A DNA stretch of 64,000 bases from positions 372,001 to 436,000 of IMG/VR virus record IMGVR_UViG_3300018080_008436; one strand, given 5' to 3'. How positions within the stretch are numbered: position 1 is the stretch's first letter; each line of letters opens with the position of its first letter. Below are positions 7,731 through 49,043 of this stretch, piece after piece. The translations under genes and the position numbers were made by a program. The notes beneath the pieces are model-generated. The model ran no database searches and was not told the origin of the DNA. It saw only the letters and a program-made list of their open reading frames with translations.

Positions 7731-7948
7731 TCTGCAACCACATCATTTTGTCCCCATTGACTTGCGCCAATGATAAAGACATCTTCATTAAGTTTAGCGT
7801 CCGTTACATTACCTTGTGATAAATCAGATATAGGGTGATCATAAAAAGTCAATGAGCCAGTATCAATGGTCTGTCCAAAGCCACCACCATCGAATGCTTG
7901 TTGCCCTTGCCTGATTGTAGTTACTAAATTTTGCCAATTAACATTCAT
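7727..7948 (-). CDS. Small hypothetical protein (tail module)
   Basis: 73-aa ORF tightly coupled to both neighbours (ATGA overlap with the downstream gene). Confidence 0.55.
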   Translation of the reverse strand: MNVNWQNLVTTIRQGQQAFDGGGFGQTIDTGSLTFYDHPISDLSQGNVTDAKLNEDVFIIGASQWGQNDVVAE

Positions 7949-7951
7949 AAT

Positions 7952-10654
7952 TTAACCATTTAACCATCTTGCTTCATATTCTTGTGAGAAGTCATTGCTA
8001 TCTGCATTGTAGTTTCTTCTCACTGATGTCAACCTATAAGGTAGATCATCCACATCTATAAACTGCAATGGGGTCGCTATTTCTTGCTGAACTCCAACAG
8101 TCTTAAAACTTATTCCTCGAATTGGTTGAAAAACTCTTTCTGCCAATCGATACATATGTGCTCTTGCAACATCAATATCCCCATACGCAGGCTGATCTAT
8201 CATAATTGGTTTCTTAAATAAGATCTTATTGTCTTTGTTCTTAGGTATAGTTGAAACCGCTATAAGATTTCTGGTATCTCTGTCCAAAGTAAATATACTA
8301 ATTAAGTTCGCCGTACTATCAAAAGTAACCTCAATATCTCTTTGGTCTAGAATTGTCGTTTTGTTAACATCTGTAGGATCAGAAGAGAAGTAATGATCTA
8401 TCACACCAGGTCCAAATGTGGCCTTATCATATCCGAGTAACCCTCCAGGCAATCTATCAATATGCATTGTACCATCAGCGTCAAAATATGTAAAAGCCTC
8501 AAATCTTTTCACGATTGTCATTATGCAGTCGAAAATTTTATCAGTTGATTTAAACCTCATCCTTGGGCTAGTAAAAGAATACCCTGAGGGTAAAAAGTAT
8601 TCTTCAATATTAGGAACCCAATCTTTTTGAAAGGAGCCGATCCCTGCTCTTTTAGCGAGATCTCTAACTGCATGATACCCAACCATTCCATCATAAAATG
8701 GACTGTTAACAACTGGAGTGTTTTGCAAAATATAGTTATAATCCTCACAAACAAGTGTTATTGTCTCTTTTCCTGGAACTTCATTTGTGCTAGTAGATAC
8801 AATAACCCCAGTAAATGTTTTTGTGAAATCTTTTGCCGTAGATGTATTGTCAGCATTCCACGTCCATCTTATATCTATGCCATACTGCCTTTGTTTTAAA
8901 GCATCATATTTTCCATTCTCATTATAGAGAACAACAGTAGCACTTTTCTTTATGTGGAAGAAGTCTGGTGCGGATGCTTCTTCTGTAATGTCTATTAAAT
9001 CTTCAGTAACTCCAACTGGGGAAAGTTTTCTAGGTTTCCTTGCTTGGACATCAACTCCTTTAAGTCTGAAGAAATATGGGGTTGCAGAATATCTAAGAGT
9101 TGTATTGTCCCAAACTTTATCATCTGGACGCATAAACAGAAGAAAGAAGTCAGTACCTTTCAAATTACCAATTGCTGGATCACCATATTTCTTAGCAAAT
9201 TCTTTCACGCTAATAAACAATGCACGACCTTCACGATGTAATCCAAATGCCGTAGGTGGTATATTATTGACAGTTTTGTTTATTCCCTCATCTCGGAAAG
9301 ACTCTGCATCAATGCCATATTGCTGTTCTTTAGTTATATTTTGTGGACCAGATGGCAGAAGACTTGTCGCCTCGCCAGTTGGATCACCAGTTTCATCTGC
9401 GGCTGAATATTGAATAATTTCAATTTTGGGATTGTTGGGATCGCCAAGAACAGGAGTCTCTTTTCTATCAACTATTGGGAAGGCCATCGCACTAAGTCTG
9501 GCAAAAGTCATTGGATAAGCGTAAACACTTGCCCTCATATTAGATCCATAAACTCTAATTTTGCCTTTGGCAATATTACATGGTTTTAATTTCCCCTTGT
9601 CATCCTTATTGCCAGTTCTAACAATTCTGGTGTAAATATAGTTGAAGTTATTTATTGTGACTACTAACCTCCCACCAATAGTCATAAACCCAACGTCGAT
9701 TCTCTTGTCGGTTGTTACCAAACGAGTAGACTCATGATCAATTACTCTACCTTGAACAGGAAACGCATTATTCCCGTAGTAGTCCATTAATCTAGGCAGT
9801 TCGTTAAGGCTCAAAACTAAATCAAATCGATCTTGATTGTTGTTCGAATCCACTCCCAAACTAATAATCCAGAATGTTTCATATTGAGCAGGATATGGGG
9901 GCCTTTCGCTCGTCTCTATTGTCACCCAGAATGGCATATTTTCTGTAAGGAAGTCGTCTGACTCCAACCCCCACCACAAACCATCTTGCACTTTACTTTG
10001 ATGGGGACAATCAAGAGTTCTTTTCTCTGGGGGTTGTTCATCAGTGCCAGTTTCGTCTGGTTGGCCAGGAGGTATGGGTTTAGCTGGAAATGAAGCGCCA
10101 AAATTTTGTAGGAATTCTTTGATTTCTGCGTCATCTGTTGTTCCATCTGTTTTCGCTTCTTTGTAGTTAGACATATTCCAGATTGGACCAACATATGTTG
10201 ACCCAGGCTCTGTATCTGGATCAATAGGCTCTCTATAAAGTGTATTATTTTTATTAGTGATATCTGTATAGTATGATGGAAAGTTTTGAGAATCCAATTT
10301 TTCTTCAATCGCCCCTGGAGTTTTTACTCCTTTTAAACTACATGGAGTCCAACTGATACGTCCATCTGCACTTGGAAGTGATGACCCAGCACTTGATGAA
10401 CCTGGAGTAATGTTGCTAAGATAATTGTCCACAAAGAATTTCTTTCTAGCTGGGAAACAAGCGGCAAAATCACTATTGTTGTCTTGAACCTGTTCCGTCA
10501 ACAATGGCTCAACATAAGGAGATTTATTAATAGCAGGCCAATGACGAGCAGTAATGTCAAAATTATACACTTGAGATTCCTGCACGACTTTGGGAAGCCT
10601 ATGCAATATTCTTACTAGTGGTGTTGCTATACCATAATTTTTGTTGTCAGCCAT
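7952..10654 (-). CDS. Putative baseplate hub / tail-tip protein
   Basis: 900 aa. The C-terminal half resembles hub proteins (FTGVIVS...ITLVCEDYNYILQ; YFDADGTMHI; YRLTSVRRNY). AGGAG RBS. Confidence 0.55.
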   Translation of the reverse strand: MADNKNYGIATPLVRILHRLPKVVQESQVYNFDITARHWPAINKSPYVEPLLTEQVQDNNSDFAACFPARKKFFVDNYLSNITPGSSSAGSSLPSADGRISWTPCSLKGVKTPGAIEEKLDSQNFPSYYTDITNKNNTLYREPIDPDTEPGSTYVGPIWNMSNYKEAKTDGTTDDAEIKEFLQNFGASFPAKPIPPGQPDETGTDEQPPEKRTLDCPHQSKVQDGLWWGLESDDFLTENMPFWVTIETSERPPYPAQYETFWIISLGVDSNNNQDRFDLVLSLNELPRLMDYYGNNAFPVQGRVIDHESTRLVTTDKRIDVGFMTIGGRLVVTINNFNYIYTRIVRTGNKDDKGKLKPCNIAKGKIRVYGSNMRASVYAYPMTFARLSAMAFPIVDRKETPVLGDPNNPKIEIIQYSAADETGDPTGEATSLLPSGPQNITKEQQYGIDAESFRDEGINKTVNNIPPTAFGLHREGRALFISVKEFAKKYGDPAIGNLKGTDFFLLFMRPDDKVWDNTTLRYSATPYFFRLKGVDVQARKPRKLSPVGVTEDLIDITEEASAPDFFHIKKSATVVLYNENGKYDALKQRQYGIDIRWTWNADNTSTAKDFTKTFTGVIVSTSTNEVPGKETITLVCEDYNYILQNTPVVNSPFYDGMVGYHAVRDLAKRAGIGSFQKDWVPNIEEYFLPSGYSFTSPRMRFKSTDKIFDCIMTIVKRFEAFTYFDADGTMHIDRLPGGLLGYDKATFGPGVIDHYFSSDPTDVNKTTILDQRDIEVTFDSTANLISIFTLDRDTRNLIAVSTIPKNKDNKILFKKPIMIDQPAYGDIDVARAHMYRLAERVFQPIRGISFKTVGVQQEIATPLQFIDVDDLPYRLTSVRRNYNADSNDFSQEYEARWLNG

Positions 10655-14979: not shown

Positions 14980-17900
14980 TTAGGCCATTTTTTCGAAAGA
15001 CATTCTTAGCCTACTATTCTTTGTCATTTCGGCATCAATTTTATCACTGAGTGTTATTTTAAGCTCACCTAAAACTTCTTTCCCGCCACTTTCACTTGGG
15101 CCTCCATCGAGTCCAGCCATCTCTCTTCCCGAAGATCTTCTGTATTCTGCTTGTGTTGCCGCATCTGATACAATATCGCTTCTTACAACGCCACCCTTCC
15201 CTTTGCCTACTGCTCTAGGAGTTTGGGGTTTAGCTTTACCCCCTCTGTGAACAATAATACCTTGATTTCCACCAAGTGCTGTTGGGACTCTACCTCCAGT
15301 ACTTTCTGGGGCATTCGCTCTAGCATCGGCATAAGCCTTTTCTCTTTCTTTTACTCTAGCGGCTTCGGCTTCGGCTTCAGCTTGTCGATCTGGGTCATAT
15401 CGCACATGTCCACCTAGTGCAGTTGAACCCCACTTAAGTGCAGATTTATCTGCCCCTTTCAATTTTTCTAATTCGGATCTAGCGGCGGCTCTCTCTGCTG
15501 ATGTAGCATCACGATCAAGAGCTTTGCTTTGGAGTTCTTTCATTCGAGTTATGTTTTGGCTATATGGTGTTGCAGGCAGTTTTTTATTAACCTTTGGCAT
15601 ACTAAGATAGTTAACACCTTCTCCCGCTGGCCTTGTATCTCGTCCTGCCCTACTTTTTGCAAGTCCCTTTCTAGCAATTTCTCTTGCTTCCTCATCCGAC
15701 ATTACTTTTTGGCCAATTGACGCTGTTGGGATTTTTGGAACACCCATCTTTTCGATTGGTCCTGTAAGATCCACTGTCCCAATGTCTTCTGGAACTGAAG
15801 CGTATCTGTCCAATACTGGAGTAGGTGTTGGAGTAGGTGTTGGAGTAGGTGTTGGGGCTTTGGAAGAAGGTCTAGTGGCTTTAGTGGATTTAGGTAAAAC
15901 GTTCTTCTTGACTTCTTCTGGAATCGCTTCCTTTCCCATTTGCCTGGCAGTTGCAAGTCTAATCCCTTTTGAACGAGAAAGTTTCCCTTTTTCAGCTTTG
16001 GTCAGGAAGTCCTCCCATTCTATTCCTTTCTTGAATTGAGGTCCTTGAGCCTGTTTGGCAGGTTCCTTCTTAACCCTTCTAGATTGTTGACTTCCTGGCT
16101 CTGGAATGCCTTTTCGTTTTCTATATTCGGCATCCACCTTATCCATATACTCTTCCTCTCTTCTTATGGCTTCAGCACTAGCTTTCTTCCTTTTTTCGGC
16201 TCGATCTTGTCTGTTTTTTCGGATAATTTTCGACACTTTGGCTTTCCCATGAGCGATAGCTTCTTTATCATCAGTATATCCCATAACAGATGCCATTATG
16301 TCTCTAAATTCAGCTTCCTGTTCTTTAAGGCTTTTACTTCTGAAAACCTCTTCTTTCATCAATTCTTCAAAGACATACTCAGCTTGTGCCGCAATAGCGC
16401 TTCTTTTATCTTGTCCTTCTCCTTTTTGTAGGAGAACATGCATCCTTTCTTGTGCCGTGCCAACAAGCGATCCTCTTTTTATAGATAGTGCCTCCCCCAT
16501 GCGAATAGCTTTGCTCATATCCTCTTGTTTCTTAGAACCAGAGGACATACTTACTGCAACCTCTTTATGGGCTTTCATCAACTCTGTCGCATTTTCACTT
16601 ACGGCATGGACTTTTTTAATAATTTCATCCTCTGTCATCCCTAAAGATTTGGCAAGTCTTTCTGTACTTTTCGATATTGTGTAAGCATTAAGGTTACCTT
16701 CTTTAATTAAATTGTCAAGGTGATTCATCTCCTCCTTGACTATTTGAGATTGTATTGTCTCTGCCATTCTACTATCACGTTTGCGCAATTCTTTTATAGC
16801 AGTTCCCATACTATATTCAAGTCCCATCATCTCATAAGAATTTTCTTCAGCATTCTTCATGGAGCTTTGGATATTCATGGCCAAACTAGCAATGGCTTGA
16901 GCCTCTACCCCCTTAAATTCGTTCATCCTTGCATCAAGTTGATTCCACGACTCAATCTGAGTACTCATTATGTATTCCTGCTCTCTGGAAAGCTTCTTTA
17001 TTTCTGATGTCGCAGTAGCAGTTCCCCCTTTAGGAGTGGCTCCTCCAGTTACAGGTTTTGCGGCTGGTTTTCTAGTAGGTCCTGTCGCAGGTGCAGGAGC
17101 GCCTTCCATTGGTCCTCTATGTCCTCCCCATGACAAGAATTGTTTTACATCTACTCCCCAATGCATTGATCCATCTGAAAGCGTTTGACTCGCGCCAGAA
17201 AATCCTTTAGCAATATCTCTTTGCCTTCTAACAATTGCCTTGCTAACTTTGACCTGTTCCTTCTGAAGAGATTTGAGTGTTTTAGAATCGTTTCTCCCAG
17301 AATCGTTAAGCTCTGTCATCTTATTGGAGATCTCTTGGCTATATTTGAGAAGTCCCTGCATTTTTGGATCTTTCTGCATCTGTCTCAACATAACTGGAGG
17401 TATGCCCATTGGACCTGGAGCGGCAGATGGCGCAAAAACATTTGTAGCTTCTGGAGTCGTTCCACGAGATCCACCTGCGACCGCTCCTGCAAAAGCAGTT
17501 ACCGTATTTGCCCCTCTTCTAGTCCTTCTTTCTTGACCTGGAGCACCTTTACCACCTTCTCCTGTTCTTACATCGATCTTAACGGATTGGAGGTTATTGC
17601 CACCACCAGACCAAGTATGAAGTGCTCGACTGAACTCACTTTCCATAAACCCTTGTTTATTGATGTTTTGTTCTAAAATTGCTCCTTTTGTATTCTCATG
17701 CTCTCTATTATCACCTATGTATCCAGCAGTTGGAGCGGCACCTTTGCCCATCATATGTTGTTGGAAAGCCTGGGCAGATCTTCCATAACCAAAGATGTCA
17801 TCAACTTGAGCACCAGCAAATGCTCCCGCTTGGAATCCGCCAATGGTGTATTTTGAAGGTGCGGCCATTCTAGCTTTTGAAGCCTCAGACCCTTGAATAG

Positions 17901-20900
17901 TATATCCACCAAGAGCCATCGTATTAAGAAAGTCAATCCCTGTTACGCCTTTTACAGAATCCATTAACTGAGTTACACCCATCTCCTGGGTTCCGATGAT
18001 AGCCTCAAACTCCCCAGCACCGAACGACATCTCTCTCAAAGCGTCAAGATAACCTTCACGTATATCTTTTGTTAGTTCATAGATTTTATTTTGAGCGCTT
18101 AAAGATTTTTGTTGCAAGTCATTGAAGTCACCTATTTGTTTATTAAGGATACCATGAATCATTCGACGTTTATTATCTGTGACACCCATTTCTTTAAGAG
18201 TAGCCAGCCCTTGGCCAAGAGCCGCTTGTATACCTTCTGTGGTGTCTTGATTCTTTGCGGCATTAAACGTAGAGAGCATGATCATCTTAGCCCTTTCTCG
18301 CTCTTCCTTCGTTAAGCCTTTCATGATCTTTTCATCTGAGACTTCGATGGCAACTCGTTGATCCTGAAGCTGTATTTGTTCTTGAATCGCTTTAATATTA
18401 TCGTATGACAAATTTACTTGTTTCTGCATCATCTGAATTGATGCACCCATACCAAATTGAGCATTTTCCATCAAAGTTCTTTCAGTATCCAACCTGGATT
18501 CCAATACTGAATTCATTTTCAAATGCTCGTCAACCGCTCCTCTAATAACTTTACTAACTGCGTCTGCCGCTGTTTTCTGATTATCGATAACTGTCTTCTG
18601 TTGCTCTGCTATTTTAAGAACTTCTGTTGTTAGACTTCGACGCATGAGTTCGTTAGCATTCAACTCATCCATCTTCTTCTTGACAGCATCTAAGTCATTA
18701 ATCTGTTTCGCCGCTTGAACATCAAGCTCTAACTGAATACCTTCTTCTCCAAGTTGTCGGATTCTATCCTCGATAGCTGAAACAGCTTCATCCAGAGTCC
18801 CTAGACGATTTTTATCAACTCCAAGGCCAATCATAATTTCTCTTCTGGCCCCTAATACTTCATCCAAGTATCTCTGTGCTTCTTCTGTTTCTTTTAAAAT
18901 AACTTGGAATGCTTCACTATATGCCTCTGATGCTTGTTTGGAAGTCATAACAAACATTTCGTTTAATGCGTCGATTTGTGAGTAAATAACATCCCTCTGA
19001 GAAGCTAACAATTTGAGGTTTGCTTCATGAGTTTTCTTAATTCTTTCCCATCTTTTGAGCATTTCTCCAAGAGTATCTGACTCATCTTTGATCCCTGTGA
19101 GTGAACCAGTTCTGAATTTTTTTCTACTTCGTTGATCAGCCTCCTCATTCTTCTTTTTTTCTAGTTCTTCTCTATTAATGGCTTCTGAAATCTTTTGACC
19201 AACAATACCGCCAATAGTAGCTCCAATCATTGTCCCCGCTGGGCCAGCCAAAGATCCAAGCAATCCACCAACAATAGCCCCACCGCCAGCGCCGACACCA
19301 GAAACAGCACTTCTTCTTAAGGAATCCCCTTTGTCAAACCCTGCACTTCTAGATCTTGAATATTCCCCCATCCCACTCATGACAGCCCCAATCACTGCCA
19401 TTGGGATGGCCATCTTCATTCCTGCCATCATTTGAGAGCCTGCACCCCCTGCGCTTCCCGCTCTCATTCCAGCGCCTGCTTCTTGCCCACCTCTTCTTAG
19501 AGCGGATCTGACATATTCCGAATTTCTTCTATCTGCGATCCTTCTGCCTCTATTGGCAATTTGATCACCCCTTATTCGTCTATTGGCCCCTTGCTCAATG
19601 GTGTCTGTCCATCTTCTTGCAGACTCTTCAAAGGCATCTGCTCTACTTCTAGTTGCAGAGGCTACCGCAGAAGCGGCTCTCCCAGCCCCTCCTCTTCCTC
19701 TACCAGCAGAAGCGACACCTTCACCAGCCCTTCCTATGGCATCACTTACATCTTCTGTCTTATCTCTTATTTTTTCTAATGAATCAAGCCAAATCTCAAA
19801 TCTTTTGGGCACTTTACCAATCTGACTAGCGATGCCTGTTCCCATAAGTGTGGTCAATGCTTGGAACGCACCAACAACCAGAAATACCTTTTCTGGCAGA
19901 CTATTCATATATTCCAGTACTTTGGACATACCCTCTGCAATGGTTTTTATATGAGGTTCAAGAGCTTGCCCCATCTTCAATACAGCATCTGCACTTTGTT
20001 GTTGTACTTTGGCTACTGACTTATTGGTTTGTAGAAGATCTTGCTCTTTTTGGTTGGTTTCTGTAGTATATTTTAAGAGACGTTCTCTTTGTTGAGCACT
20101 CATGTTCCCATATTCACCAGCAACCGCCAATGACGTTCTTAGAACCTTCAACCTTTCTCTTGCTCCTGCGGCCTCATCTTTATCACCAGTTCTGATCTCC
20201 TCCATAACCTTACTGACTTCCATCATAGCATCTAAAGCAGGAGGATAGCTCTCAAAAACACCTAACAAATCTTGAGCGACTTCTTTGGCAACTTTTACAT
20301 TAGGTCCGAACTGTGTTTGAAGGATCTTCGCGAATTGAGCTATCTGTTGAACAGTAGGAGTCATTCCAACATAACCAGAAGCAACACTTTGAGCAAAATC
20401 AACGAATTCTTTTTTGGAGAAACTTGTCTCTTTGCTGACATATCGCATGGTGTCGGCCATATTTTTATTGCCAACCCCGAATACTTTATATGTCCTTTCC
20501 AAATCATAAAGAGACTGGTTGTACTCAAGAACACTATTCATTGCATTCCCGATAGAGAATGTCTGAGCGCCAAATGCTCCAAGGAATTTATTAAACTCCG
20601 CGCCAGCGGCCCTCATTGCACTTTGCATTTTGTGAAGTGCTTTTATGTTGTCTTTAATTTTCTCAGAATAAGTTCTAGATTCTTTGGCTATTTTTTCTTT
20701 TGCTAAGGCATGCCTTTTTTCTTCAATCCTTGCTTCTTTGGTTTTCTTAATGCTTTCTTTGATAGCATTGAGTTCTTTTATAATACTTTCCCGACTTCTA
20801 TCAGTGAGTTGGCTATTTCTTCCTTTTTCTTCAGCCTCTTTTCTTATAGCTTTGATAGCTTTGTCAATATTACCAGACATACGTCCGTAACTAATCAAAG

Positions 20901-21213
20901 TGTCTTCAACAGTCTTGTGTAATTCATTTTGAGCTTCGGCACTTTTCTTGGATTGAGATCTAATAGACTCCAGGGCTTCTTTGTATTTTTTGAAAGCACT
21001 ATCTACATCTTTTACGGACTTGATGAAGTCTTTGAGTTTATCTTCACTCATACCGAGAGATTTTGCAAAATCCTTAAGATTTTTTTCGGCCTCTTTAGTG
21101 TTTAAGGAAAGACTGGCGGCTCTTTTAAGAGCTTCAATAAAGTTATTCAACTGAGTCATTTGCTCAGGAGTAACAACCAAATCTTCTATAAAATCTCGTG
21201 AAATGTCTGCCAT
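14980..21213 (-). CDS. Tail tape measure protein
   Basis: 2077 aa, helical/coiled-coil with Gly/Ala-rich hydrophobic segments (GAGGGAIVGGLLGSLAGPAGTMIGATIGG); lies downstream of the tail tube and chaperones. Confidence 0.85.
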   Translation of the reverse strand: MADISRDFIEDLVVTPEQMTQLNNFIEALKRAASLSLNTKEAEKNLKDFAKSLGMSEDKLKDFIKSVKDVDSAFKKYKEALESIRSQSKKSAEAQNELHKTVEDTLISYGRMSGNIDKAIKAIRKEAEEKGRNSQLTDRSRESIIKELNAIKESIKKTKEARIEEKRHALAKEKIAKESRTYSEKIKDNIKALHKMQSAMRAAGAEFNKFLGAFGAQTFSIGNAMNSVLEYNQSLYDLERTYKVFGVGNKNMADTMRYVSKETSFSKKEFVDFAQSVASGYVGMTPTVQQIAQFAKILQTQFGPNVKVAKEVAQDLLGVFESYPPALDAMMEVSKVMEEIRTGDKDEAAGARERLKVLRTSLAVAGEYGNMSAQQRERLLKYTTETNQKEQDLLQTNKSVAKVQQQSADAVLKMGQALEPHIKTIAEGMSKVLEYMNSLPEKVFLVVGAFQALTTLMGTGIASQIGKVPKRFEIWLDSLEKIRDKTEDVSDAIGRAGEGVASAGRGRGGAGRAASAVASATRSRADAFEESARRWTDTIEQGANRRIRGDQIANRGRRIADRRNSEYVRSALRRGGQEAGAGMRAGSAGGAGSQMMAGMKMAIPMAVIGAVMSGMGEYSRSRSAGFDKGDSLRRSAVSGVGAGGGAIVGGLLGSLAGPAGTMIGATIGGIVGQKISEAINREELEKKKNEEADQRSRKKFRTGSLTGIKDESDTLGEMLKRWERIKKTHEANLKLLASQRDVIYSQIDALNEMFVMTSKQASEAYSEAFQVILKETEEAQRYLDEVLGARREIMIGLGVDKNRLGTLDEAVSAIEDRIRQLGEEGIQLELDVQAAKQINDLDAVKKKMDELNANELMRRSLTTEVLKIAEQQKTVIDNQKTAADAVSKVIRGAVDEHLKMNSVLESRLDTERTLMENAQFGMGASIQMMQKQVNLSYDNIKAIQEQIQLQDQRVAIEVSDEKIMKGLTKEERERAKMIMLSTFNAAKNQDTTEGIQAALGQGLATLKEMGVTDNKRRMIHGILNKQIGDFNDLQQKSLSAQNKIYELTKDIREGYLDALREMSFGAGEFEAIIGTQEMGVTQLMDSVKGVTGIDFLNTMALGGYTIQGSEASKARMAAPSKYTIGGFQAGAFAGAQVDDIFGYGRSAQAFQQHMMGKGAAPTAGYIGDNREHENTKGAILEQNINKQGFMESEFSRALHTWSGGGNNLQSVKIDVRTGEGGKGAPGQERRTRRGANTVTAFAGAVAGGSRGTTPEATNVFAPSAAPGPMGIPPVMLRQMQKDPKMQGLLKYSQEISNKMTELNDSGRNDSKTLKSLQKEQVKVSKAIVRRQRDIAKGFSGASQTLSDGSMHWGVDVKQFLSWGGHRGPMEGAPAPATGPTRKPAAKPVTGGATPKGGTATATSEIKKLSREQEYIMSTQIESWNQLDARMNEFKGVEAQAIASLAMNIQSSMKNAEENSYEMMGLEYSMGTAIKELRKRDSRMAETIQSQIVKEEMNHLDNLIKEGNLNAYTISKSTERLAKSLGMTEDEIIKKVHAVSENATELMKAHKEVAVSMSSGSKKQEDMSKAIRMGEALSIKRGSLVGTAQERMHVLLQKGEGQDKRSAIAAQAEYVFEELMKEEVFRSKSLKEQEAEFRDIMASVMGYTDDKEAIAHGKAKVSKIIRKNRQDRAEKRKKASAEAIRREEEYMDKVDAEYRKRKGIPEPGSQQSRRVKKEPAKQAQGPQFKKGIEWEDFLTKAEKGKLSRSKGIRLATARQMGKEAIPEEVKKNVLPKSTKATRPSSKAPTPTPTPTPTPTPVLDRYASVPEDIGTVDLTGPIEKMGVPKIPTASIGQKVMSDEEAREIARKGLAKSRAGRDTRPAGEGVNYLSMPKVNKKLPATPYSQNITRMKELQSKALDRDATSAERAAARSELEKLKGADKSALKWGSTALGGHVRYDPDRQAEAEAEAARVKEREKAYADARANAPESTGGRVPTALGGNQGIIVHRGGKAKPQTPRAVGKGKGGVVRSDIVSDAATQAEYRRSSGREMAGLDGGPSESGGKEVLGELKITLSDKIDAEMTKNSRLRMSFEKMA

Positions 21214-36774: not shown

Positions 36775-36855
36775 TATATACTCCTTAGGTTAAATGAAAA
36801 TAATGTTCGGTATATATTTCAAGAGATCACCCCCTTTACCCTTCTAGATATTATA

Positions 36856-36889
36856 AAAGAAAACCCCTCCTACGAATGCAGGAGGGGTT
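36856..36889 (-). terminator. Intrinsic terminator of the suppressor-tRNA operon
   Basis: AACCCCTCCTGCA-TTCG-TAGGAGGGGTTTTCTTTT. Confidence 0.8.
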
Positions 36890-36895
36890 CCTATC

Positions 36896-37228
36896 TTACG
36901 CCAGTGGAAATCCTTTAAAGTATTGCTCACCTTGTTCTTTGGTCATCGGATAGAAGGCTACAGCAGTCCAGCCGAATTCTTCGGGATAGTAAGTGTCATA
37001 GAAGAAGCGCATTTTTACGCCATCTTCTTTGGCTTTCTCAACAATGAATTCGGCTCTTCTTTTCTTAGCCTGAACCATGACCAAAGTCTGATCATAATTC
37101 ACCCATTGTCCCATCCCTTCGTCCTATCCGTAGTCAAAGGTCAGCTTAGCCAAAGCATGAGCACCTTGGACTTTTCGCTGATCTCGACTAAGTTCAGATT
37201 TCGTCAATACAAAAACACACGTATCCAT
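36896..37228 (-). CDS. PTH2-like peptidyl-tRNA hydrolase with in-frame TAG at codon 35 (37124-37126)
   Basis: GGAGG RBS then MDTCVFVLTKSELSRDQRKVQGAHALAKLTFDYG*DEGMGQWVNYDQTLVMVQ...GWTAVAFYP...FKGFPLA. The QxxHA and TAVA..P motifs of the PTH2 family lie on either side of the TAG. Confidence 0.75.
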
Positions 37229-37229
37229 C

Positions 37230-37607
37230 TTAGTCCTCCAATCCAGGAATGGTTAAATTGTAGTCAGACAGGATCTTCTTAAGCTCTCGAACGGCGAAAG
37301 AGTTTTCCCATCGTTCTCCACTAAAATCCGTAAGGAATTCCTGGTCAGACTCATAAGAGCCAGTATGGGGGCGATTATGGCGAAGACGATTGTGGATGAT
37401 ATGACAAACAGTGATCCATCCACTACCAGCATAACGATGCTTTTCAAAACCTTTTTTGAAATCTTCGCGTTGTTCTTTGGAGGATTCGTACTTACCATCG
37501 TTCTCAGTAATGTATCCAACGATACAACCTTTGAGATAATCGATAGCTTTTCTTTGGGCGAGTTCTTCTTCGGACAGGATTGGTTGTTCTTTAACTTCAG
37601 TAGTCAT
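37230..37607 (-). CDS. Hypothetical protein of the suppressor-tRNA operon
   Basis: 125 aa, AAGGAG RBS, His/Arg-rich CHIIHNRLRHNRPH. Confidence 0.7.
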   Translation of the reverse strand: MTTEVKEQPILSEEELAQRKAIDYLKGCIVGYITENDGKYESSKEQREDFKKGFEKHRYAGSGWITVCHIIHNRLRHNRPHTGSYESDQEFLTDFSGERWENSFAVRELKKILSDYNLTIPGLED

Positions 37608-37674
37608 TTTTAGTTCTCCTTAATTTGATTTGACTATCTTTCATTACTTCTTTTGAACGAAAACGATAACCAAC

Positions 37675-37731
37675 TCAAGGAGGACCTCGAATTACCTACG
37701 TGAAACCTTTAATTGTAAGAACCTATGTCAT
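37675..37731 (-). CDS. Putative leader/arrest peptide MT*VLTIKGFT*VIRGPP (two in-frame TAG)
   Basis: AAGGATAAGGT-ATG ACA TAG GTT CTT ACA ATT AAA GGT TTC ACG TAG GTA ATT CGA GGT CCT CCT TGA, 16 nt after the tRNA CCA. Confidence 0.6.
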
Positions 37732-37747
37732 ACCTTATCCTTTTTTT

Positions 37748-37822
37748 TGGTGCCCCTGCTGGGACTCGAACCCAGATTAGCAAGGTTAGAGCTTGCCGCT
37801 TTTGCCTTTAAGCTACAGAAGC
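37748..37822 (-). tRNA. Amber suppressor tRNA, anticodon CUA
   Basis: 75-nt cloverleaf GCTTCTG TA GCTT AAAGGCAA AAGC G GCAAG CT-CTA-AC CTTGC TAAT CTGGG TTCGAGT CCCAG CAGGGGC A CCA; anticodon at 37787-37789. Confidence 0.9.
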
Positions 37823-37836
37823 ATCTTCTACAGCCT

Positions 37837-37864
37837 ATTATAACTCATGATTACTTGTTGTCAA
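37837..37864 (-). promoter_or_regulatory. Consensus sigma70/sigmaA promoter for the tRNA operon
   Basis: TTGACA (37859-37864), 16-nt spacer, TATAAT (37837-37842). Confidence 0.85.
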
Positions 37865-39102: not shown

Positions 39103-40578
39103 TTAAGCTCCATTTAACTCCATGATTCTTTTATAGACATTATCTATGGCCTGATCCCAGGTGTAGAACTCTTCTAAATCTGACCTTAAATTATCAGCTT
39201 TGTCCAAAGAATCCTCGTAGTTTTCAAACACATATCTCATATGTGCTTTAGTTTCTTCAATCGCATTCCTTCCAAAATTTGGGAAGGTTTGGTCTTCATA
39301 AAAACGGCAGTGTTTTGCTAGTTTTCTCAGATGACCATTTGTTTCTGCTGTTACAAGACCGTCTGGTGCAACCATATATGCATTGCTGTCGTTTAAGAAA
39401 TCTGAATGACCAGAACAATCGCTTGCAATTACGGGCATTCCACTTGCTCCAGCTTCTGCATATGGAAGTCCAAATCCCTCACCGCGAGAGATTAAAACAA
39501 AGGCATCAGCAGAACCATAGATATTGGGCATATACCTTTCTGGAATCTCGTTATCATACAAAGCGATATGAGGCAACTCATCATCACTTTTATTTATAGA
39601 TTCTCTAATTCCTGCGAAATCTTTCTGGATCTGGTTTTGATCATTAAAAGCTTCTGCTCTGGATACAAGAAGTAATGTGACATTGTCATCTGCCGAAAAT
39701 TCTTCCATAAATGCTTTTAGAAGTATGTCGTAACCTTTTCTATATCCCCATTTGAATACACTTAGAAAGACAAAATCATTTAACTCCTGATTGAAATCGA
39801 AATCTTTTCTGTCAGGAGTGTATCTATCCACATCAACTCCTAAAGGCATAACCAAAACTGGGGGATGAACCCCATTTTGCTTAAACATTTCTTGAGCGAA
39901 TCTAGTTGGAACCCATATCTCATCAAAGAGATTAAGCTTCCCAACATAATCTGGATGCAGAGAACCAGAAGTTTCCATCATTGTGTAAAGAATTCTCCTT
40001 CCACCATGGAACATATTCAAAGGTATCGTAGCTCCAAATATTTTTGGGGCATTGTCAGCAATGGCTGTTCTACTCATTCTTCGAATTTGCTTCTCAGTTT
40101 CTTCATTCACATGAACATCTGACTCCTGAATATCAAGCTTAACTCTTAATCCTCTATTAGCAAGTCCAAATGCAAAGGCTCTATTCATTCGACTAAACCC
40201 TGCATAACTGGTGAAATGCCCGTACCAATGAACACTTGGGTTATTACTCAGGTCATAATTTATGTTGTAGGACTCTTGCACTTTTACCTCCCGTATAGGA
40301 ATTTTTTTGGGCTTTATCTCTCTACTCTCTTTAACTGTGGGTTTATGACCTTTTAAAGCATCATATTCTTCAATTAAAGACACTGTTCCATTTGACCCAT
40401 CCGATTCAATAACTACTGTTTGAAATTCTTGAGGGCCATCTGGATGCTTCCAACACTCAACAAAATCTGGCAGTTCAATATCTGGATCGTCATTTTCAGT
40501 ATTTAGAATCTTCATCTCTGGCTTTGGCACTATGACTCTTTCACATGCCAATTCATATGCCGACTTAATTTTTGACAT
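39103..40578 (-). CDS. Glycosyltransferase family 4 (GT-B)
   Basis: RKGYDILL and SRGEGFGLPYAEAGASGMPVIA motifs; likely start MSKIKS at 40578. Confidence 0.9.
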   Translation of the reverse strand: MSKIKSAYELACERVIVPKPEMKILNTENDDPDIELPDFVECWKHPDGPQEFQTVVIESDGSNGTVSLIEEYDALKGHKPTVKESREIKPKKIPIREVKVQESYNINYDLSNNPSVHWYGHFTSYAGFSRMNRAFAFGLANRGLRVKLDIQESDVHVNEETEKQIRRMSRTAIADNAPKIFGATIPLNMFHGGRRILYTMMETSGSLHPDYVGKLNLFDEIWVPTRFAQEMFKQNGVHPPVLVMPLGVDVDRYTPDRKDFDFNQELNDFVFLSVFKWGYRKGYDILLKAFMEEFSADDNVTLLLVSRAEAFNDQNQIQKDFAGIRESINKSDDELPHIALYDNEIPERYMPNIYGSADAFVLISRGEGFGLPYAEAGASGMPVIASDCSGHSDFLNDSNAYMVAPDGLVTAETNGHLRKLAKHCRFYEDQTFPNFGRNAIEETKAHMRYVFENYEDSLDKADNLRSDLEEFYTWDQAIDNVYKRIMELNGA

Positions 40579-40657
40579 AAGTAGAATTTGCATACCCTTT
40601 TGTGCATTATACATATTTTCAGGGTATAATTTAGTAAACCGCATAGGAGAACAGACA

Positions 40658-40981
40658 ATGAAAAGATGGGAAGCTGTAGGTAAAAATGATAGTGAGATCA
40701 ATGAAGATGACATCAATTGGGAGTTGGTAAAAAACAGAGTCAAGTCTCTCCAATTAAACAACAATGGTCAAATCATCCGTTTGCCTGACAATATGGAATA
40801 TATACAAGGGAAGACTGCCAGTGCCAATCTTATGGGTGGAAAAGTTCAGATTGAATCTAGGTATGTTGGCATAAAAGTTGGAAATAATATAGTTAAGATA
40901 CGAGTGGATGAAAAAACCAACGATATTTCCATAGAGGTAGAAGATGACCCCAATTACATACCTAATCCAAAACAGGACTAG
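40658..40981 (+). CDS. Hypothetical protein
   Basis: Start MKRWEA at 40658 after AGGAG; TATAAT upstream; divergent from the GT gene. Confidence 0.6.
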   Translation: MKRWEAVGKNDSEINEDDINWELVKNRVKSLQLNNNGQIIRLPDNMEYIQGKTASANLMGGKVQIESRYVGIKVGNNIVKIRVDEKTNDISIEVEDDPNYIPNPKQD

Positions 40982-41369
40982 AATTCCCATCAATACTTTG
41001 GATGCAAAGTCCTTAACATTTGGTATGGTGGCTCCAAACGAAACGGCCCAAACCAATATCGTACAGCTTTATGTACCAGATGCCGCCGCAATTACCAATA
41101 TTCGACTTGCATTAATCGATACTGGAGGTATAATGTTTGGATCTACTACTTTTGGAGTAGATAACAGATCGTTTATCGACAATAATGTAGTACCCGAATC
41201 ATTTTTTCAAGGTGTTAGCGACAAAAGCGTAAATTCGCCTTACAATATATCAGTAGCAAACCTAAATAGATTAGCCAGTGAGTACATATATCTGAATGTG
41301 GATATCCCAATTGGTCAAACTTTTATCGCTGGAACAATAAGATATCAATGGCTTTTTGACTATGCATAG
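40944..41369 (+). CDS. Hypothetical beta-rich protein
   Basis: 141 aa, GAGG RBS. Confidence 0.6.
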   Translation: MTPITYLIQNRTRIPINTLDAKSLTFGMVAPNETAQTNIVQLYVPDAAAITNIRLALIDTGGIMFGSTTFGVDNRSFIDNNVVPESFFQGVSDKSVNSPYNISVANLNRLASEYIYLNVDIPIGQTFIAGTIRYQWLFDYA

Positions 41370-41376
41370 GGGTAAT

Positions 41377-43383
41377 ATGAGAGTACAAATACAACCAACA
41401 AAAGACGAACAAGAGCTTTTTGAACTATTAAGGAATACAGTTAAGAAAGTGGCCCCTGGAACTTCATTAAGAGTTGCAGGCGGGTGGGTTCGTGACAATC
41501 TTCTAGGGAAGAAGTCAAATGACATTGATTTCATGGTTGACAACATGTCTGGAGAGCAAATTGCTCGATTAATCACAAATGAGCTTGGTCTAAGTGGACC
41601 CCATGTTGTTCAAGCAAACCCAGATGCCTCCAAACATTTGGAAACCGCTGGAGCAGAAATCCCCATATCAAATGGCAAGGTGTTTGATCTTGATTTTGCC
41701 ATCGCAAGACAAGAAATTTACCATGATGACTCAAGAATTCCTGAGATCAAACCAGCGACTCCAGAAGAAGACGCTTTCAGAAGGGATTTGACCATTAATT
41801 CTATGTTCTACAATATTATGACTGGAGAACTGGAAGATTTCACTGGAAGAGGAATGGAAGATCTTAAGAGTAGAACAATTAAAACTCCTGAAGACCCACT
41901 GAAAACATTCAAAGATGACCCTTTAAGAATTTTCAGAACTATTCGTTTCGCTTCAAGGTACAATGGTAATATTGACCCAGAAACACTTTCTGCTATGAAT
42001 AATCCAGAATTACATAGCGAAATTAGAGAAAAAGTGTCAAAAGAGAGGATTCAAGAGGAACTCTTCAAAACAATGAAGGGACCAAATCCTCTGATGGCCA
42101 TCAATTTGCTGAAAGAAACTGGCATATTCAGAGACATCATAGAAGATGCTGTCAAAGGTAGTAAATTTGAAGGAAAAATCGCTCCACTTGACATGGAGCA
42201 GAACAATCCTCATCATGAGCTAACGGTTTGGGGTCACACCCTAAAAGTTGTCGAAAATCTGTTGATGTACTATCCAGACACAGATCCTGAGAAACGTGCT
42301 ATCATGATCCTAACAGCGGTTATGCATGATTTAGGGAAGCTTTATTACGACATTCATGTCGATAAGGGGGATCAAACTTCTTACTATGGACATGCAGACG
42401 CTAGTGGTGAAATTGCTGAGATGATTATGCGTTACTTGAAGTTTAATAACAAAATGATTGATCAAGTCTCCAAGATGTCAAAGCATCATATGAGAGTTCA
42501 CTTGGTTGAAAATGACAAAAACTTAAGTGGCGAAGGAAAACGTTTGGCATTTTTCAGAAAATTTATTAGAAAGATGCTGGCTGAAGGTATCGATGCGATG
42601 GACATAATGAATCTTTCTATTGCTGATGCTTATAGCAAAGGTCACAAAATTGTTGATCCTTCAGTAGTTAAAAACTATCAACTTTTAAAAACTCAACTTG
42701 AGCAGGCTTTGGCTTCAATAAGTGTTGACCAAAATCAAAAGAAAGTTGTCCCAGTGTTGAATGGACGAGAAATTATGACTATTCTAAACATTAATCCTGG
42801 GTGCATGGTTGGTGATGCGACTAGATTTGTTTATGAGTTAATGGATGAGAATCCTAAAATCACCAAAGATGAGGCCGCAGAAAGATTAGTTGAAGAGTTC
42901 GCACACAAAATTGACAACGAAGAAAAAATTAGGCAAGCTTCTGCATGTCCAAAGCATCTTCTGTTTAGCAAGATTGATGAAATAAAAGAAGCGATTAATG
43001 ATGAGAATTGTGACAGAGCAATTACAATTATGACCACTCTCAAGAAAGAGAATGAAGATGACGAAAGTGTATATGCAGAAATTGCGAACCGTATGCTTGA
43101 TGTCTTGCTTATAGACCGTTCGAAAAGGAACTTTGAACTTCTAGGTTATGTATTTGACAAAGCAATAGATAACTTCTTTGATGTAGAAGTTTGCATACCT
43201 GTTCTTGGAATCTTGTTACTCTTAAAGACAGGTACAAAAGAAGAGCATATAGAAACATTATGTGAAAGAATGAAGAACATGGCGAATGATAAATTACAAG
43301 TCATGTTAAAGAAATTACCTGATGATGCTTATCATAAGAAATTCATAAAAAGGTTAAAGAATGGAAGATGTAACTGCAAATGA
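41377..43383 (+). CDS. cca: Class II CCA-adding tRNA nucleotidyltransferase with HD domain
   Basis: VAGGWVRD, DIDF, ARQEIYHDDSRIP loop, DAFRRDLTINSM, DDPLRIFRTIRFASR, VSKERIQEE, HT...MHDLGK. Confidence 0.9.
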   Translation: MRVQIQPTKDEQELFELLRNTVKKVAPGTSLRVAGGWVRDNLLGKKSNDIDFMVDNMSGEQIARLITNELGLSGPHVVQANPDASKHLETAGAEIPISNGKVFDLDFAIARQEIYHDDSRIPEIKPATPEEDAFRRDLTINSMFYNIMTGELEDFTGRGMEDLKSRTIKTPEDPLKTFKDDPLRIFRTIRFASRYNGNIDPETLSAMNNPELHSEIREKVSKERIQEELFKTMKGPNPLMAINLLKETGIFRDIIEDAVKGSKFEGKIAPLDMEQNNPHHELTVWGHTLKVVENLLMYYPDTDPEKRAIMILTAVMHDLGKLYYDIHVDKGDQTSYYGHADASGEIAEMIMRYLKFNNKMIDQVSKMSKHHMRVHLVENDKNLSGEGKRLAFFRKFIRKMLAEGIDAMDIMNLSIADAYSKGHKIVDPSVVKNYQLLKTQLEQALASISVDQNQKKVVPVLNGREIMTILNINPGCMVGDATRFVYELMDENPKITKDEAAERLVEEFAHKIDNEEKIRQASACPKHLLFSKIDEIKEAINDENCDRAITIMTTLKKENEDDESVYAEIANRMLDVLLIDRSKRNFELLGYVFDKAIDNFFDVEVCIPVLGILLLLKTGTKEEHIETLCERMKNMANDKLQVMLKKLPDDAYHKKFIKRLKNGRCNCK

Positions 43384-48707: not shown

Positions 48708-49043
48708 CTATCTAAACTCATTTCCCCATTTGTCGAGGTTTTCGTATGGTATTGTAAACAAATAATCTTCAACTTTGCTTGAACGTGTCCCAAAAGAGAC
48801 ATCATAATATATCCCATCACATTTGACTAAAGCGTGGTTAACTCCATCCTTTCTACAAACAACAACATCTGCTTTGTATCCCGCTTCTCTTAATGCTTTG
48901 CAATACCTTCCACACAGATTACTGCAATCATTGGCATTGGGAATCTTCTTTTCTTTATTAAGTGACCAGAAAATATCTGGTAATGGTATTTTTTGAAAAT
49001 TTAGTAATTTGTATAAGAACGATTTGAACCATTTCATGATCAC
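48708..49043 (-). CDS. Transglutaminase/papain-like Cys protease domain protein
   Basis: DCSN...HALV...YYD (Cys-His-Asp). Confidence 0.5.
   Translation of the reverse strand: MIMKWFKSFLYKLLNFQKIPLPDIFWSLNKEKKIPNANDCSNLCGRYCKALREAGYKADVVVCRKDGVNHALVKCDGIYYDVSFGTRSSKVEDYLFTIPYENLDKWGNEFR

What the first reader, a model, noticed from the sequence alone, without database searches (positions are those of the whole stretch)
36856..37864. Self-contained amber-readthrough operon: suppressor tRNA(CUA), amber-containing RGPP leader and amber-interrupted PTH2
Seen in sequence: one ~1-kb unit bounded by a perfect TTGACA-N16-TATAAT promoter and a terminator. It encodes a tRNA with anticodon CUA, a leader ORF MT*VLTIKGFT*VIRGPP(TGA), a 125-aa protein, and a PTH2-like peptidyl-tRNA hydrolase split by one TAG at codon 35. 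The three in-frame TAGs I found in the window all sit within 630 nt of the suppressor tRNA. The long structural genes carry no internal TAG, and several end on TAG. Established: suppressor tRNAs compete with RF1 at UAG, and PTH2 recycles peptidyl-tRNA. Inference: this is a local genetic switch, not genome-wide recoding. Hydrolase output would depend on UAG readthrough, so it could sense RF1 activity, suppressor charging or host attack on translation, and supply peptidyl-tRNA rescue only when needed.
Basis: partly seen in the sequence, partly recalled or inferred. Interest (0 to 1): 0.92.

Follow-up and report, generated by a model that had tools for sequence, protein, structure and literature searches.

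The report
Amber-gated suppressor tRNA–PTH2 phage operon
A 525-kb phage carries a 1-kb operon, kept in at least 13 diverged relatives, in which a tRNA that reads the UAG stop codon sits beside a ribosome-stalling leader peptide and a peptidyl-tRNA-hydrolase-like gene that both contain conserved in-frame UAGs, so the operon's output probably depends on its own tRNA.

Summary

**What is there**
- The minus-strand unit 37864→36860 holds a perfect sigma-70 promoter, a tRNA(CUA), an 18-codon leader with UAG at codons 3 and 12 ending RGPP-UGA, a 125-aa gene, a PTH2-fold gene with UAG at codon 35, and a terminator.
- Thirteen diverged lineages (28–68% protein identity) keep TAG at exactly this PTH2 codon, while the Gly codon before it varies synonymously.
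- Wherever the contig reaches far enough upstream, a tRNA(CUA) is found.
- Nine lineages keep a leader starting M-x-UAG, and ten keep R-G/A-P-P, spelled with five different Arg codons.
- About 100 kb of this genome is standard code and uses TAG as a real stop, so recoding is local as far as sampled.

**Best reading**
- This is an arrest-peptide-controlled operon gated by amber suppression.
- Its output should rise steeply with UAG readthrough.

**Not shown**
- Arrest, control of the downstream genes, enzyme activity, the inserted residue and the biological purpose are inferred, not tested.
- I found no published description.

The parts
37837..37864 (-). Sigma-70 consensus promoter TTGACA-N16-TATAAT, 14 nt upstream of the tRNA 5' end
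   Evidence: 12/12 matches. The same perfect promoter lies 13-14 nt before the tRNA in L001, L009 and L020, and with 1-2 mismatches in L021 and L023.
37748..37822 (-). Amber suppressor tRNA: anticodon CUA, G1:C72, A73, short variable loop, encoded CCA
   Evidence: ARAGORN; Rfam RF00005 62 bits; cloverleaf fold. Relatives are aligned. The amino-acid identity is unresolved.
37675..37731 (-). Leader ORF MT*VLTIKGFT*VIRGPP-TGA. UAGs at 37725-37723 and 37698-37696; RGPP codons at 37689-37678.
   Evidence: Conserved as a peptide in relatives: Arg is spelled CGA/AGA/CGC/AGG/CGT, and one lineage has RAPP..
37671..37694 (-). Hairpin over the RGPP codons and stop, followed by a U-rich tract. It contains CCUCCUU, an anti-Shine-Dalgarno mimic.
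   Evidence: Terminator-like hit. Fold -17.4 kcal/mol, z -3.35 in the window, but weak in several relatives. One covarying pair. Predicted pairing with the downstream SD.
37616..37621 (-). Shine-Dalgarno AAGGAG of the 125-aa gene, the predicted partner of the CCUCCUU in the leader
37230..37607 (-). 125-aa protein of unknown function: all-helical, no internal TAG, invariant H-x3-NRxRH-x3-H stretch
   Evidence: 28 homologs. Alignment. AlphaFold pLDDT 89, with no PDB or BFVD fold match. No Pfam, NCBIfam or PADLOC hit, and only a 12-residue PHROG match at E 0.01.
37127..37228 (-). PTH2-like gene, N-terminal piece (codons 1-34)
   Evidence: hhalign to residues 1-33 of uninterrupted relatives, probability 97.8%.
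37124..37126 (-). Conserved in-frame TAG, codon 35 of the PTH2-like gene
   Evidence: TAG in 13 of 13 lineages, while the preceding Gly is GGA/GGC/GGT. It maps to the loop between helices 1 and 2 of the fold.
36896..37123 (-). PTH2-like gene, C-terminal piece (75 codons) plus TAA stop
   Evidence: Pfam PTH2 is the top hit for all 4 C pieces tested, best E 3.3e-4. hhalign to residues 36-107 of uninterrupted relatives, probability 99.7%.
36860..36891 (-). Intrinsic terminator closing the unit
   Evidence: A hairpin plus T run sits at the same place in relatives, with different stem sequences.

Best explanation
This is a conserved phage operon whose expression is gated by its own amber suppressor tRNA, through an RGPP-type ribosome-arrest leader.

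**Proposed sequence of events**
1. Host sigma-70 RNA polymerase transcribes the tRNA(CUA), the leader, the 125-aa gene and the PTH2-fold gene as one unit.
2. A ribosome on the leader meets UAG at codon 3 and, in most lineages, a second UAG just before x-x-R-G-P-P.
3. If RF1 wins, the ribosome leaves.
4. If the suppressor tRNA wins both times, the ribosome reaches R-G-P|P and arrests, as published for RAPP/RGPP peptides.
5. The arrested ribosome covers the GGUCCUCCUU stretch. That stretch otherwise forms a small hairpin or pairs with the AAGGAG ribosome-binding site 70 nt downstream. Translation of the 125-aa gene is thereby switched on, as in SecM-type logic.
6. The adjoining PTH2-fold gene needs a third readthrough, in a surface loop, to be made full length.

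Output would therefore rise roughly with the second to third power of suppression efficiency.

**Shown:** the parts, their co-occurrence, peptide-level selection on the leader, selection for the three UAGs, the PTH2 fold, and standard code around the unit.

**Inferred:** arrest, unmasking of the ribosome-binding site, hydrolase activity, the residue inserted, and the purpose.

**Purpose, my best guess:** a delay or homeostat tied to UAG decoding. The downstream products would act on tRNA or peptidyl-tRNA once suppression is high.
For: - **Anatomy in the window:**
- **Same module in relatives at 28-68% identity:** tRNA(CUA) upstream wherever the contig reaches.
- **PTH2 TAG:** 13 of 13 lineages at the same codon, with synonymous variation beside it. 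Three database proteins showing 'Q' there have TAG in the DNA.
- **Uninterrupted relatives:** they exist, with Trp, His, Thr or Ser at that site, so the codon could be lost but is kept.
- **Leader conservation:** M-x-UAG in all 9 lineages where the leader's start is on the contig, and R-G/A-P-P in all 10. Five Arg codons are used, and the only amino-acid change gives RAPP.
- **Arrest motif in the literature:** RGPP gives the most robust, EF-P-refractory arrest and is the most avoided tetrapeptide in bacterial proteomes (PMC12992588). [quoted passage not shown]
- **RNA pairing:** RNAalifold pairs the G-P-P codons with the downstream SD. Duplex energies are -6.4 to -12.4 kcal/mol, ranking 4-168 of 384 synonymous spellings. 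Codon-usage-weighted P is 0.014-0.65.
- **Spacing:** the leader stop lies 66-74 nt from the next ATG in seven lineages.
- **PTH2 fold:** 7 of 10 uninterrupted relatives pass Pfam's PTH2 cut-off. The two pieces are collinear halves of one domain. The model has pLDDT 98 and TM 0.84 to archaeal Pth2 and human Bit1.
- **Code usage:** standard code, with TAG used as a stop, in 100 kb of the genome.
Against: - There are no expression data of any kind.
- The RNA features are only moderately supported. The hairpin is strong in the window but weak in L018, L021, L023 and L012.
- The pairing statistics are modest and the lineages are not independent.
- Third-position changes in L001 and L009 weaken the anti-SD pairing.
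- In L024 and L036 the leader runs on past RGPP, and L036 has only one UAG.
- In L031 the tRNA lies 14 nt before the PTH2 gene, with no leader or 125-aa gene between them. The tRNA-PTH2(UAG) pair can therefore exist without the leader.
- Known RAPP-type peptides are much longer than this leader. Whether 14-17 residues suffice for arrest is untested.
- The 125-aa protein has no recognisable function.
- About 81% of the 525-kb genome was not read.
Confidence: 0.55

Rival explanations
1. Partial genome recoding. The suppressor exists to decode TAG-containing genes elsewhere in the unread 420 kb, for example a lysis block as in code-15 phages. The three nearby TAGs would then be ordinary recoded codons with no sensing role.
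For: Phages with suppressor tRNAs often recode only late genes, and 'code change modules' are known. Only about 19% of the contig was read. TAA dominates the stops, 41 of 55, as in relatives of recoded phages.
Against: No other in-frame TAG turns up in 100 kb that includes large structural-type genes. TAG ends 8 of 55 genes in the window and 4 of 9 in one flank. The three sites are positionally fixed across 28-68% identity. Two of them lie in an 18-codon leader next to an arrest motif, which ordinary recoding does not predict.
Confidence: 0.2
2. Linkage or addiction. The in-frame TAGs persist because they make the downstream genes useless without the neighbouring tRNA. This keeps a mobile tRNA-PTH2 cassette together, with no quantitative regulatory role.
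For: The tRNA-PTH2(UAG) pair occurs in different arrangements: directly adjacent in L031, and with extra ORFs or tRNA-like genes between in L009, L018 and L024.
Against: It explains neither the conserved arrest motif nor the UAG at codon 3 of a leader. In most lineages the unit sits at the same syntenic place, between a glycosyltransferase or phosphatase and the 247-aa gene.
Confidence: 0.1
3. The leader is conserved as RNA only, as a hairpin or anti-SD element, and is not translated. Its reading frame and UAGs are incidental.
For: GG-N-CC-N-CC is self-complementary and contains CCUCC. One covarying pair is seen, and pairing with the SD is predicted.
Against: Arg switches between CGN and AGR, a first-position change that keeps the amino acid. 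ATG-NNN-TAG and G-F-T-TAG are kept in frame with synonymous changes. An SD-like AAGGA precedes the ATG in most lineages. The hairpin is weak in half of the lineages.
Confidence: 0.1
4. Artefact or decay: an assembly error, a pseudogene, or a pyrrolysine system.
For: ARAGORN labels the tRNA 'Pyl'. A single TAG could be a sequencing error.
Against: The same TAGs occur in independent assemblies from JGI, ENA and Logan samples. Both halves of the gene are under purifying selection. The 'Pyl' label is only ARAGORN's name for anticodon CTA, and the tRNA fits the general tRNA model end to end.
Confidence: 0.02

Closest known systems
RAPP-like ribosome arrest peptides (SecM RAGP; ApdA/ApdP RAPP; RGPP variants). 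PMC10951233, PMC12992588.
   Same: A C-terminal R-G/A-P-P motif in a small ORF placed upstream of the genes it would control. Published logic: the arrested ribosome unmasks the downstream ribosome-binding site.
   Different: This leader has 17-18 codons and no signal or membrane segment, so no pulling force can release it. It is encoded by a phage. Reaching the motif requires reading one or two UAG codons. The downstream genes are tRNA-related, not Sec/YidC.
Stop-codon-recoded (code 15) phages and the Jade-phage 'code change module' (bioRxiv 10.1101/2021.08.26.457843)
   Same: A phage-encoded suppressor tRNA(CUA) in a standard-code setting, with expression of some genes dependent on it.
   Different: [quoted passage not shown] Here only three UAGs are found in 100 kb, all inside the tRNA's own operon, and TAG still ends genes.
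prfB (RF2) autoregulation through an in-frame UGA
   Same: An early in-frame stop codon inside a translation-related gene makes its synthesis depend on how that stop is decoded.
   Different: prfB uses +1 frameshifting and senses RF2. Here the codon would be read through by a co-encoded tRNA, in competition with RF1.
PepNL arrest peptide of E. coli (PMC11890864)
   Same: Stop-codon readthrough and nascent-peptide arrest are coupled in a short upstream ORF.
   Different: In PepNL, readthrough cancels an arrest that occurs at the stop codon. Here readthrough would be the precondition for reaching the arrest motif.
Archaeal and eukaryotic Pth2 (PF01981; PDB 3erj, 1xty, 1q7s)
   Same: Same fold in the family (TM 0.84). 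The Q..HA and D...TA(V/I)AF.P motifs are collinear.
   Different: Distant in sequence. The window's own pieces fall below Pfam's cut-off. The gene is phage-borne and split by a conserved UAG. Activity is untested.
Phage lambda bar minigenes (from my own knowledge, not checked here)
   Same: AUG-NNN-stop at the leader's start is formally a two-codon minigene. That kind causes peptidyl-tRNA drop-off and makes cells depend on peptidyl-tRNA hydrolase.
   Different: There is no evidence here that the leader acts this way. This is a lead only.

Membership tests
tRNA (Rfam RF00005), amber suppressor | Cloverleaf that fits the tRNA covariance model above the gathering score | tested here: met
   62 bits against a gathering score of 29, model positions 1-71 of 71; ARAGORN
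tRNA (Rfam RF00005), amber suppressor | Anticodon CUA with U33 and a purine at 37 | tested here: met
   C-U-C-U-A-A-C loop. CUA is invariant in 7 aligned relatives.
tRNA (Rfam RF00005), amber suppressor | It is charged and inserts an amino acid at UAG | not testable with these tools
   BLAST to annotated phage tRNAs gives mixed Met, Lys, Leu and Glu neighbours. Acceptor stems differ between lineages.
PTH2 peptidyl-tRNA hydrolase (PF01981) | Sequence match above Pfam's gathering score | tested here: inconclusive
   The window's C piece scores 16.3 bits against a cut-off of 23. PTH2 is the top hit for all 4 C pieces (best E 3.3e-4), and the N pieces alone give no hit. Seven of 10 uninterrupted relatives found with the C-piece profile pass, at 24.8-46.1 bits.
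PTH2 peptidyl-tRNA hydrolase (PF01981) | Pth2 alpha/beta fold over the full domain | tested here: met
   Tested on an uninterrupted relative, L033:352-672. pLDDT 98; Foldseek E 5e-8 and TM 0.84 to 3erj, 1xty and 1q7s. The window's N and C pieces align to its residues 1-33 and 36-107.
PTH2 peptidyl-tRNA hydrolase (PF01981) | Hydrolysis of peptidyl-tRNA | not testable with these tools
   Needs an enzyme assay or complementation of an E. coli pth(ts) strain.
RAPP-like arrest peptides | R-A/G-P-P core at or near the C terminus of a small ORF | tested here: met
   RGPP in 9 lineages and RAPP in 1. The motif is directly followed by a stop in 8 of 10.
RAPP-like arrest peptides | Located upstream of, and co-oriented with, the regulated gene | tested here: met
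   66-74 nt before the 125-aa gene in seven lineages. It overlaps that gene's start in L036.
RAPP-like arrest peptides | Demonstrated elongation arrest with peptidyl-RAP/RGP-tRNA in the P site | not testable with these tools
   Needs toeprinting or peptidyl-tRNA gels.
RAPP-like arrest peptides | N-terminal secretion or membrane segment that releases the arrest (monitoring substrate) | tested here: not met
   The leader has 17-18 codons, too short to leave the exit tunnel.
Code-15 (TAG-recoded) phage | In-frame TAG in many genes, with higher coding density when TAG is read as sense | tested here: not met
   Coverage is 0.943 under standard code and 0.946 with TAG as sense. The flanks behave alike. 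TAG is used as a stop. This covers only 19% of the genome.
Classical transcription attenuator (leader peptide plus terminator/antiterminator) | A conserved terminator hairpin with a U run after the leader, plus an alternative structure | tested here: inconclusive
   The window has a terminator-like hairpin. It is weak or absent in L012, L018, L021 and L023, and L021 lacks the U tract.

The most novel reading that the evidence does not exclude
The leader is the first arrest peptide gated by stop codons, and it works as a monitoring substrate for UAG decoding or peptidyl-tRNA turnover. Ribosomes arrest at RGPP only after the phage's own tRNA has beaten RF1 twice. The arrested short peptidyl-tRNA(Pro) complex switches on the 125-aa and PTH2-fold genes, and their products resolve the arrest or act on the suppressor tRNA. 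That closes a feedback loop which holds amber suppression within bounds in a phage that still uses TAG as a stop.
Probability: 0.25. Interest if true: 0.9.

Novelty: new variant of a known kind. Interest (0 to 1): 0.85.

Why it matters
Phage suppressor tRNAs are usually read as tools for whole-genome recoding or for codon supply. Here a suppressor appears to serve first as the input of a small circuit built from three conserved UAG codons and the strongest known ribosome-arrest motif.

If the model holds, four things follow:
- It would be a natural example of stop-codon readthrough used as a graded, multiplicative gate.
- It would extend RAPP/RGPP arrest peptides to phages and to very short leaders.
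- It would point to a function for phage PTH2-fold proteins and for a new 125-aa helical family.
- It would offer a possible intermediate stage on the route to recoding.

The parts are small and portable, so the model can be tested directly in laboratory E. coli or in a PURE in vitro translation system.

Tried and rejected
**Searches that found nothing**
- DNA and protein searches of the INPHARED phage set with the module and the C piece: no match.
- A scan of 185,579 bacterial and archaeal genomes with the C-piece profile: no relative, so no host clue.
- PDB sequence searches with each PTH2 piece: nothing.
- Four literature searches for a suppressor-tRNA/PTH2 or amber-gated phage leader: none found.

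**tRNA identity**
- BLAST gave inconsistent neighbours, so identity is unresolved.

**The 125-aa protein**
- The model is confident, but nothing in PDB or BFVD matches it.
- There is no Pfam, NCBIfam or PADLOC hit, and only a 12-residue PHROG match at E 0.01.
- I considered a HEPN-like R-x4-H reading of RHNRPH. I dropped it because no HEPN hit appears and the distant homolog in L032 lacks the motif.

**Other candidate readthrough sites**
- TAG at 48710: rejected, because the next gene has its own start and signal peptide.
- A TAG-joined frame at the start of L040: looks like chance.

**RNA models**
- Pairing between leader codons 4-5 and the SD appears in the window's MFE fold. By eye it has no counterpart in L009.
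- An intrinsic-terminator attenuator model is not supported across lineages.

**Constraint followed**
Its pieces were searched apart, and the fold test used a naturally uninterrupted relative.
Full report
**1.

- The scan finds TTGACA-N16-TATAAT at 37864-37837, with 12 of 12 matches. It also finds a 14-pair hairpin with a T run at 36891-36860.
- ARAGORN calls a 75-nt tRNA at 37822-37748 with anticodon CTA.
- Rfam's tRNA model matches it end to end at 62 bits. It folds as a cloverleaf and encodes its CCA end.
- The sequence then reads ATG ACA TAG ... ACG TAG GTA ATT CGA GGT CCT CCT TGA at 37731-37675.
- A 125-aa ORF follows at 37607-37230.
- Two bases later comes a frame of 34 codons, one TAG at 37126-37124, 75 codons and TAA.

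**2. The code around the unit is standard**

- Standard-code ORFs cover 94.3% of the window. Reading TAG as sense changes this to 94.6%, no more than the TGA or TAA controls.
- Eight of 55 ORFs of at least 60 aa, picked greedily, end in TAG. They include ORFs of 907, 833 and 585 aa.
- The one other sizeable TAG-joined frame, at 48710, is two genes. The second starts at its own ATG with a signal peptide.

**3. Source of the window**

- The window is part of a 524,692-bp metagenomic contig, Ga0180433_10000003. The same phage is in IMG/VR as contigs of 476 kb and 296 kb.
- Walking out on both sides added 36.6 kb. This is also standard code, with no tRNA, and TAG ends 4 of 9 genes in one flank.
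- So 100.6 kb, 19% of the genome, shows in-frame TAG only inside this unit. The rest was not read.

**4. The comparative test**

The C piece of the split gene finds relatives. Reading the DNA around them gives the following.
- Loci L001-L003, L005-L010, L012, L017 and L018 hold the same unit.
- Homologs of the 125-aa protein led to L020, L021, L023 and L024.
- A profile search of 1.8 billion representatives with the C pieces led to L030, L031 and L032. An IMG/VR scan led to L036.
- Across these lineages (28-68% identity) the codon after ..[Y/F]-G is TAG in 13 of 13. The invariant Gly before it is spelled GGA, GGC or GGT, and other neighbouring codons vary freely.
- Three database proteins that show Gln at this site were called under another code. 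Their DNA has TAG.
- Naturally uninterrupted relatives exist, with Trp, His, Thr or Ser there. The TAG could therefore be lost, yet it is kept.
- A tRNA with anticodon CTA lies upstream in every locus whose contig reaches far enough. In L031 it is only 14 nt from the gene.
- The perfect promoter recurs 13-14 nt before the tRNA in four lineages, and nearly perfect in two more.

**5. The leader is conserved as a peptide**

Leader sequences by lineage:

| Lineage | Leader |
|---|---|
| Window | MT*VLTIKGFT*VIRGPP |
| L001 | ML*IFKTGFT*GARGPP |
| L009, L020 | ML*IFKSGFT*VARGPP |
| L018 | ML*ILKSGFT*KIRGPP |
| L023 | ML*IYKSGFT*GIRGPP |
| L021 | MT*IFKSRFT*GARAPP |
| L012 (cut by contig end) | ..RGPP |
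| L024 | MM*VEEGFT*NARGPP, then 27 more codons |
| L036 | MM*..GFFVFTRGPP.., with one TAG, running into the next gene |

- Arg is written CGA, AGA, CGC, AGG or CGT. Gly and both Pro codons vary at the third position. The only amino-acid change in the motif gives RAPP.
- That pattern is selection on the peptide.
- Of the 30 UAGs in the module across lineages, 28 are followed by a purine.

**6. What R-G/A-P-P means**

- In SecM-type operons the arrested ribosome exposes the ribosome-binding site of the next gene (PMC10951233).
- RGPP gives the most robust arrest, is not rescued by EF-P, and works with varied N-terminal contexts.
- It is the most under-represented tetrapeptide in many bacterial phyla (PMC12992588).
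- The arrest is at Pro-Pro, not at the stop. That fits L024 and L036, where sense codons follow the motif.

**7. How the arrest could act**

- The G-P-P codons spell GGUCCUCCUU, which contains the anti-Shine-Dalgarno sequence.
- RNAalifold pairs it with the AAGGAGAAC site of the 125-aa gene about 70 nt downstream.
- Duplex energies are -6.4 to -12.4 kcal/mol.
- The natural spelling ranks 4 to 168 among the 384 synonymous spellings.
- Weighted by the phage's codon usage, P is 0.014-0.65 per lineage, and 0.0026 combined if the lineages are wrongly treated as independent.
- A local hairpin over the same codons is strong in the window (z -3.35) but weak in half of the relatives. It shows one covarying pair, with AU, CG and UG forms.
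- I rate these RNA features as suggestive. A conserved intrinsic-terminator attenuator is not supported.

**8. The split gene belongs to the PTH2 fold**

- All four C pieces tested have PTH2 as their top Pfam hit, below the cut-off. The N pieces alone give nothing.
- Uninterrupted relatives found with the C-piece profile pass the cut-off in 7 of 10 cases.
- Profile-profile alignment puts the N piece on residues 1-33 and the C piece on residues 36-107 of such a relative. The TAG therefore stands for one residue.
- That relative's model (pLDDT 98) matches archaeal Pth2 and human Bit1 at TM 0.84.
- The TAG site falls in the loop between helices 1 and 2, a position likely to tolerate any residue.

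**9. The 125-aa protein**

- It is a confident five-helix model with no match in PDB or BFVD. It has no Pfam, NCBIfam or PADLOC hit, and only a 12-residue PHROG match at E 0.01.
- It accompanies the PTH2-fold gene in most lineages and contains no TAG.

**10. Interpretation**

- Shown: a conserved operon in which a suppressor tRNA is linked to three conserved UAGs, one arrest-type leader and one PTH2-fold gene, inside an otherwise standard-code region.
- Inferred: readthrough-dependent arrest, unmasking of the next gene's ribosome-binding site, and a steep dependence of output on suppression.
- The purpose is open. Candidates are a timer that follows tRNA build-up from a strong early promoter, a homeostat limiting suppression in a phage that still uses TAG stops, or a response to changes in RF1 or tRNA state.
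- The neighbourhood is tRNA-oriented. It holds a CCA-adding enzyme, and in relatives a His phosphatase and a 2',5' RNA ligase-like gene.
- Rivals are given with their weights in the Rival explanations section.

**11. Novelty**

- The parts are known kinds: phage suppressor tRNAs, RAPP-type arrest peptides, and in-frame stops used as sensors, as in prfB.
- I found no paper that describes their combination. The library searched is incomplete, so this is not proof of absence.

Noticed in passing
L004:1-1520: In one relative an IS200/IS605-type element (a TnpB/OrfB gene plus a small ORF) is inserted in the PTH2-like gene. It sits directly after TTAC, two codons before the conserved TAG, and its right end reads ..TCAA. 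This resembles IS608 target choice, as I recall it.
   Followed up: partly
L024:3321-3505 and 3511-3645; also 6555-8226: Two tRNA-like genes with long internal inserts lie between the suppressor tRNA and the leader (Rfam tRNA 39 and 32 bits over 185 and 135 nt). They may contain introns. A 15-tRNA array lies downstream.
   Followed up: partly
window 36830-36870 (minus strand); L001:5255-5290; L006:1280-1320: Right after the module's terminator, every lineage has TTTTATAAT(A) and then a G-rich GGGTAAA-like box ahead of the conserved 247-aa gene. This may be a phage-specific promoter for a highly expressed gene.
   Followed up: no
window 41356-43383 (+); relatives L001:3670-4203 and 8105-8737, L009:8299-8910: tRNA-repair-like neighbourhood: a CCA-adding enzyme with an HD domain in the window. 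In relatives, a His_Phos_1 phosphatase lies directly before the suppressor tRNA, and there is a 2',5' RNA ligase-like gene.
   Followed up: partly
window 39103-40764 (-); L001:1-2299, L009:4028-6808, L021:1-1867: The GT4 glycosyltransferase upstream of the module carries an intein with a LAGLIDADG endonuclease in several relatives, but not in the window.
   Followed up: no
L009:9013-9285, L017:2603-2875, L018:1-470: Some lineages have one or two small ORFs inserted between the tRNA and the leader. One is a 90-aa protein with two CxxC pairs and a hydrophobic tail. The tRNA-leader adjacency is therefore not strict.
   Followed up: no
window 37678-37689 and the same codons in L009, L020, L021, L024, L036: The leader uses rare codons. 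Arg is CGA, CGC or CGT where the phage uses AGA 64% of the time. The second Pro is CCG (2% usage) in four lineages. The third bases of the Arg codon and the second Pro codon covary.
   Followed up: partly
L030:463-537: Downstream of another TAG-split PTH2 gene, ARAGORN calls a tRNA of undetermined type with a four-base anticodon (tatg).
   Followed up: no
window 14980-21213 (-) and 3363-7730 (-): Very large ORFs (2077 and 1455 aa) in a long co-oriented block. Several large proteins gave no PHROG match. The 833-aa protein at 57687-60188 matches a head-maturation-protease family at its N terminus.
   Followed up: no
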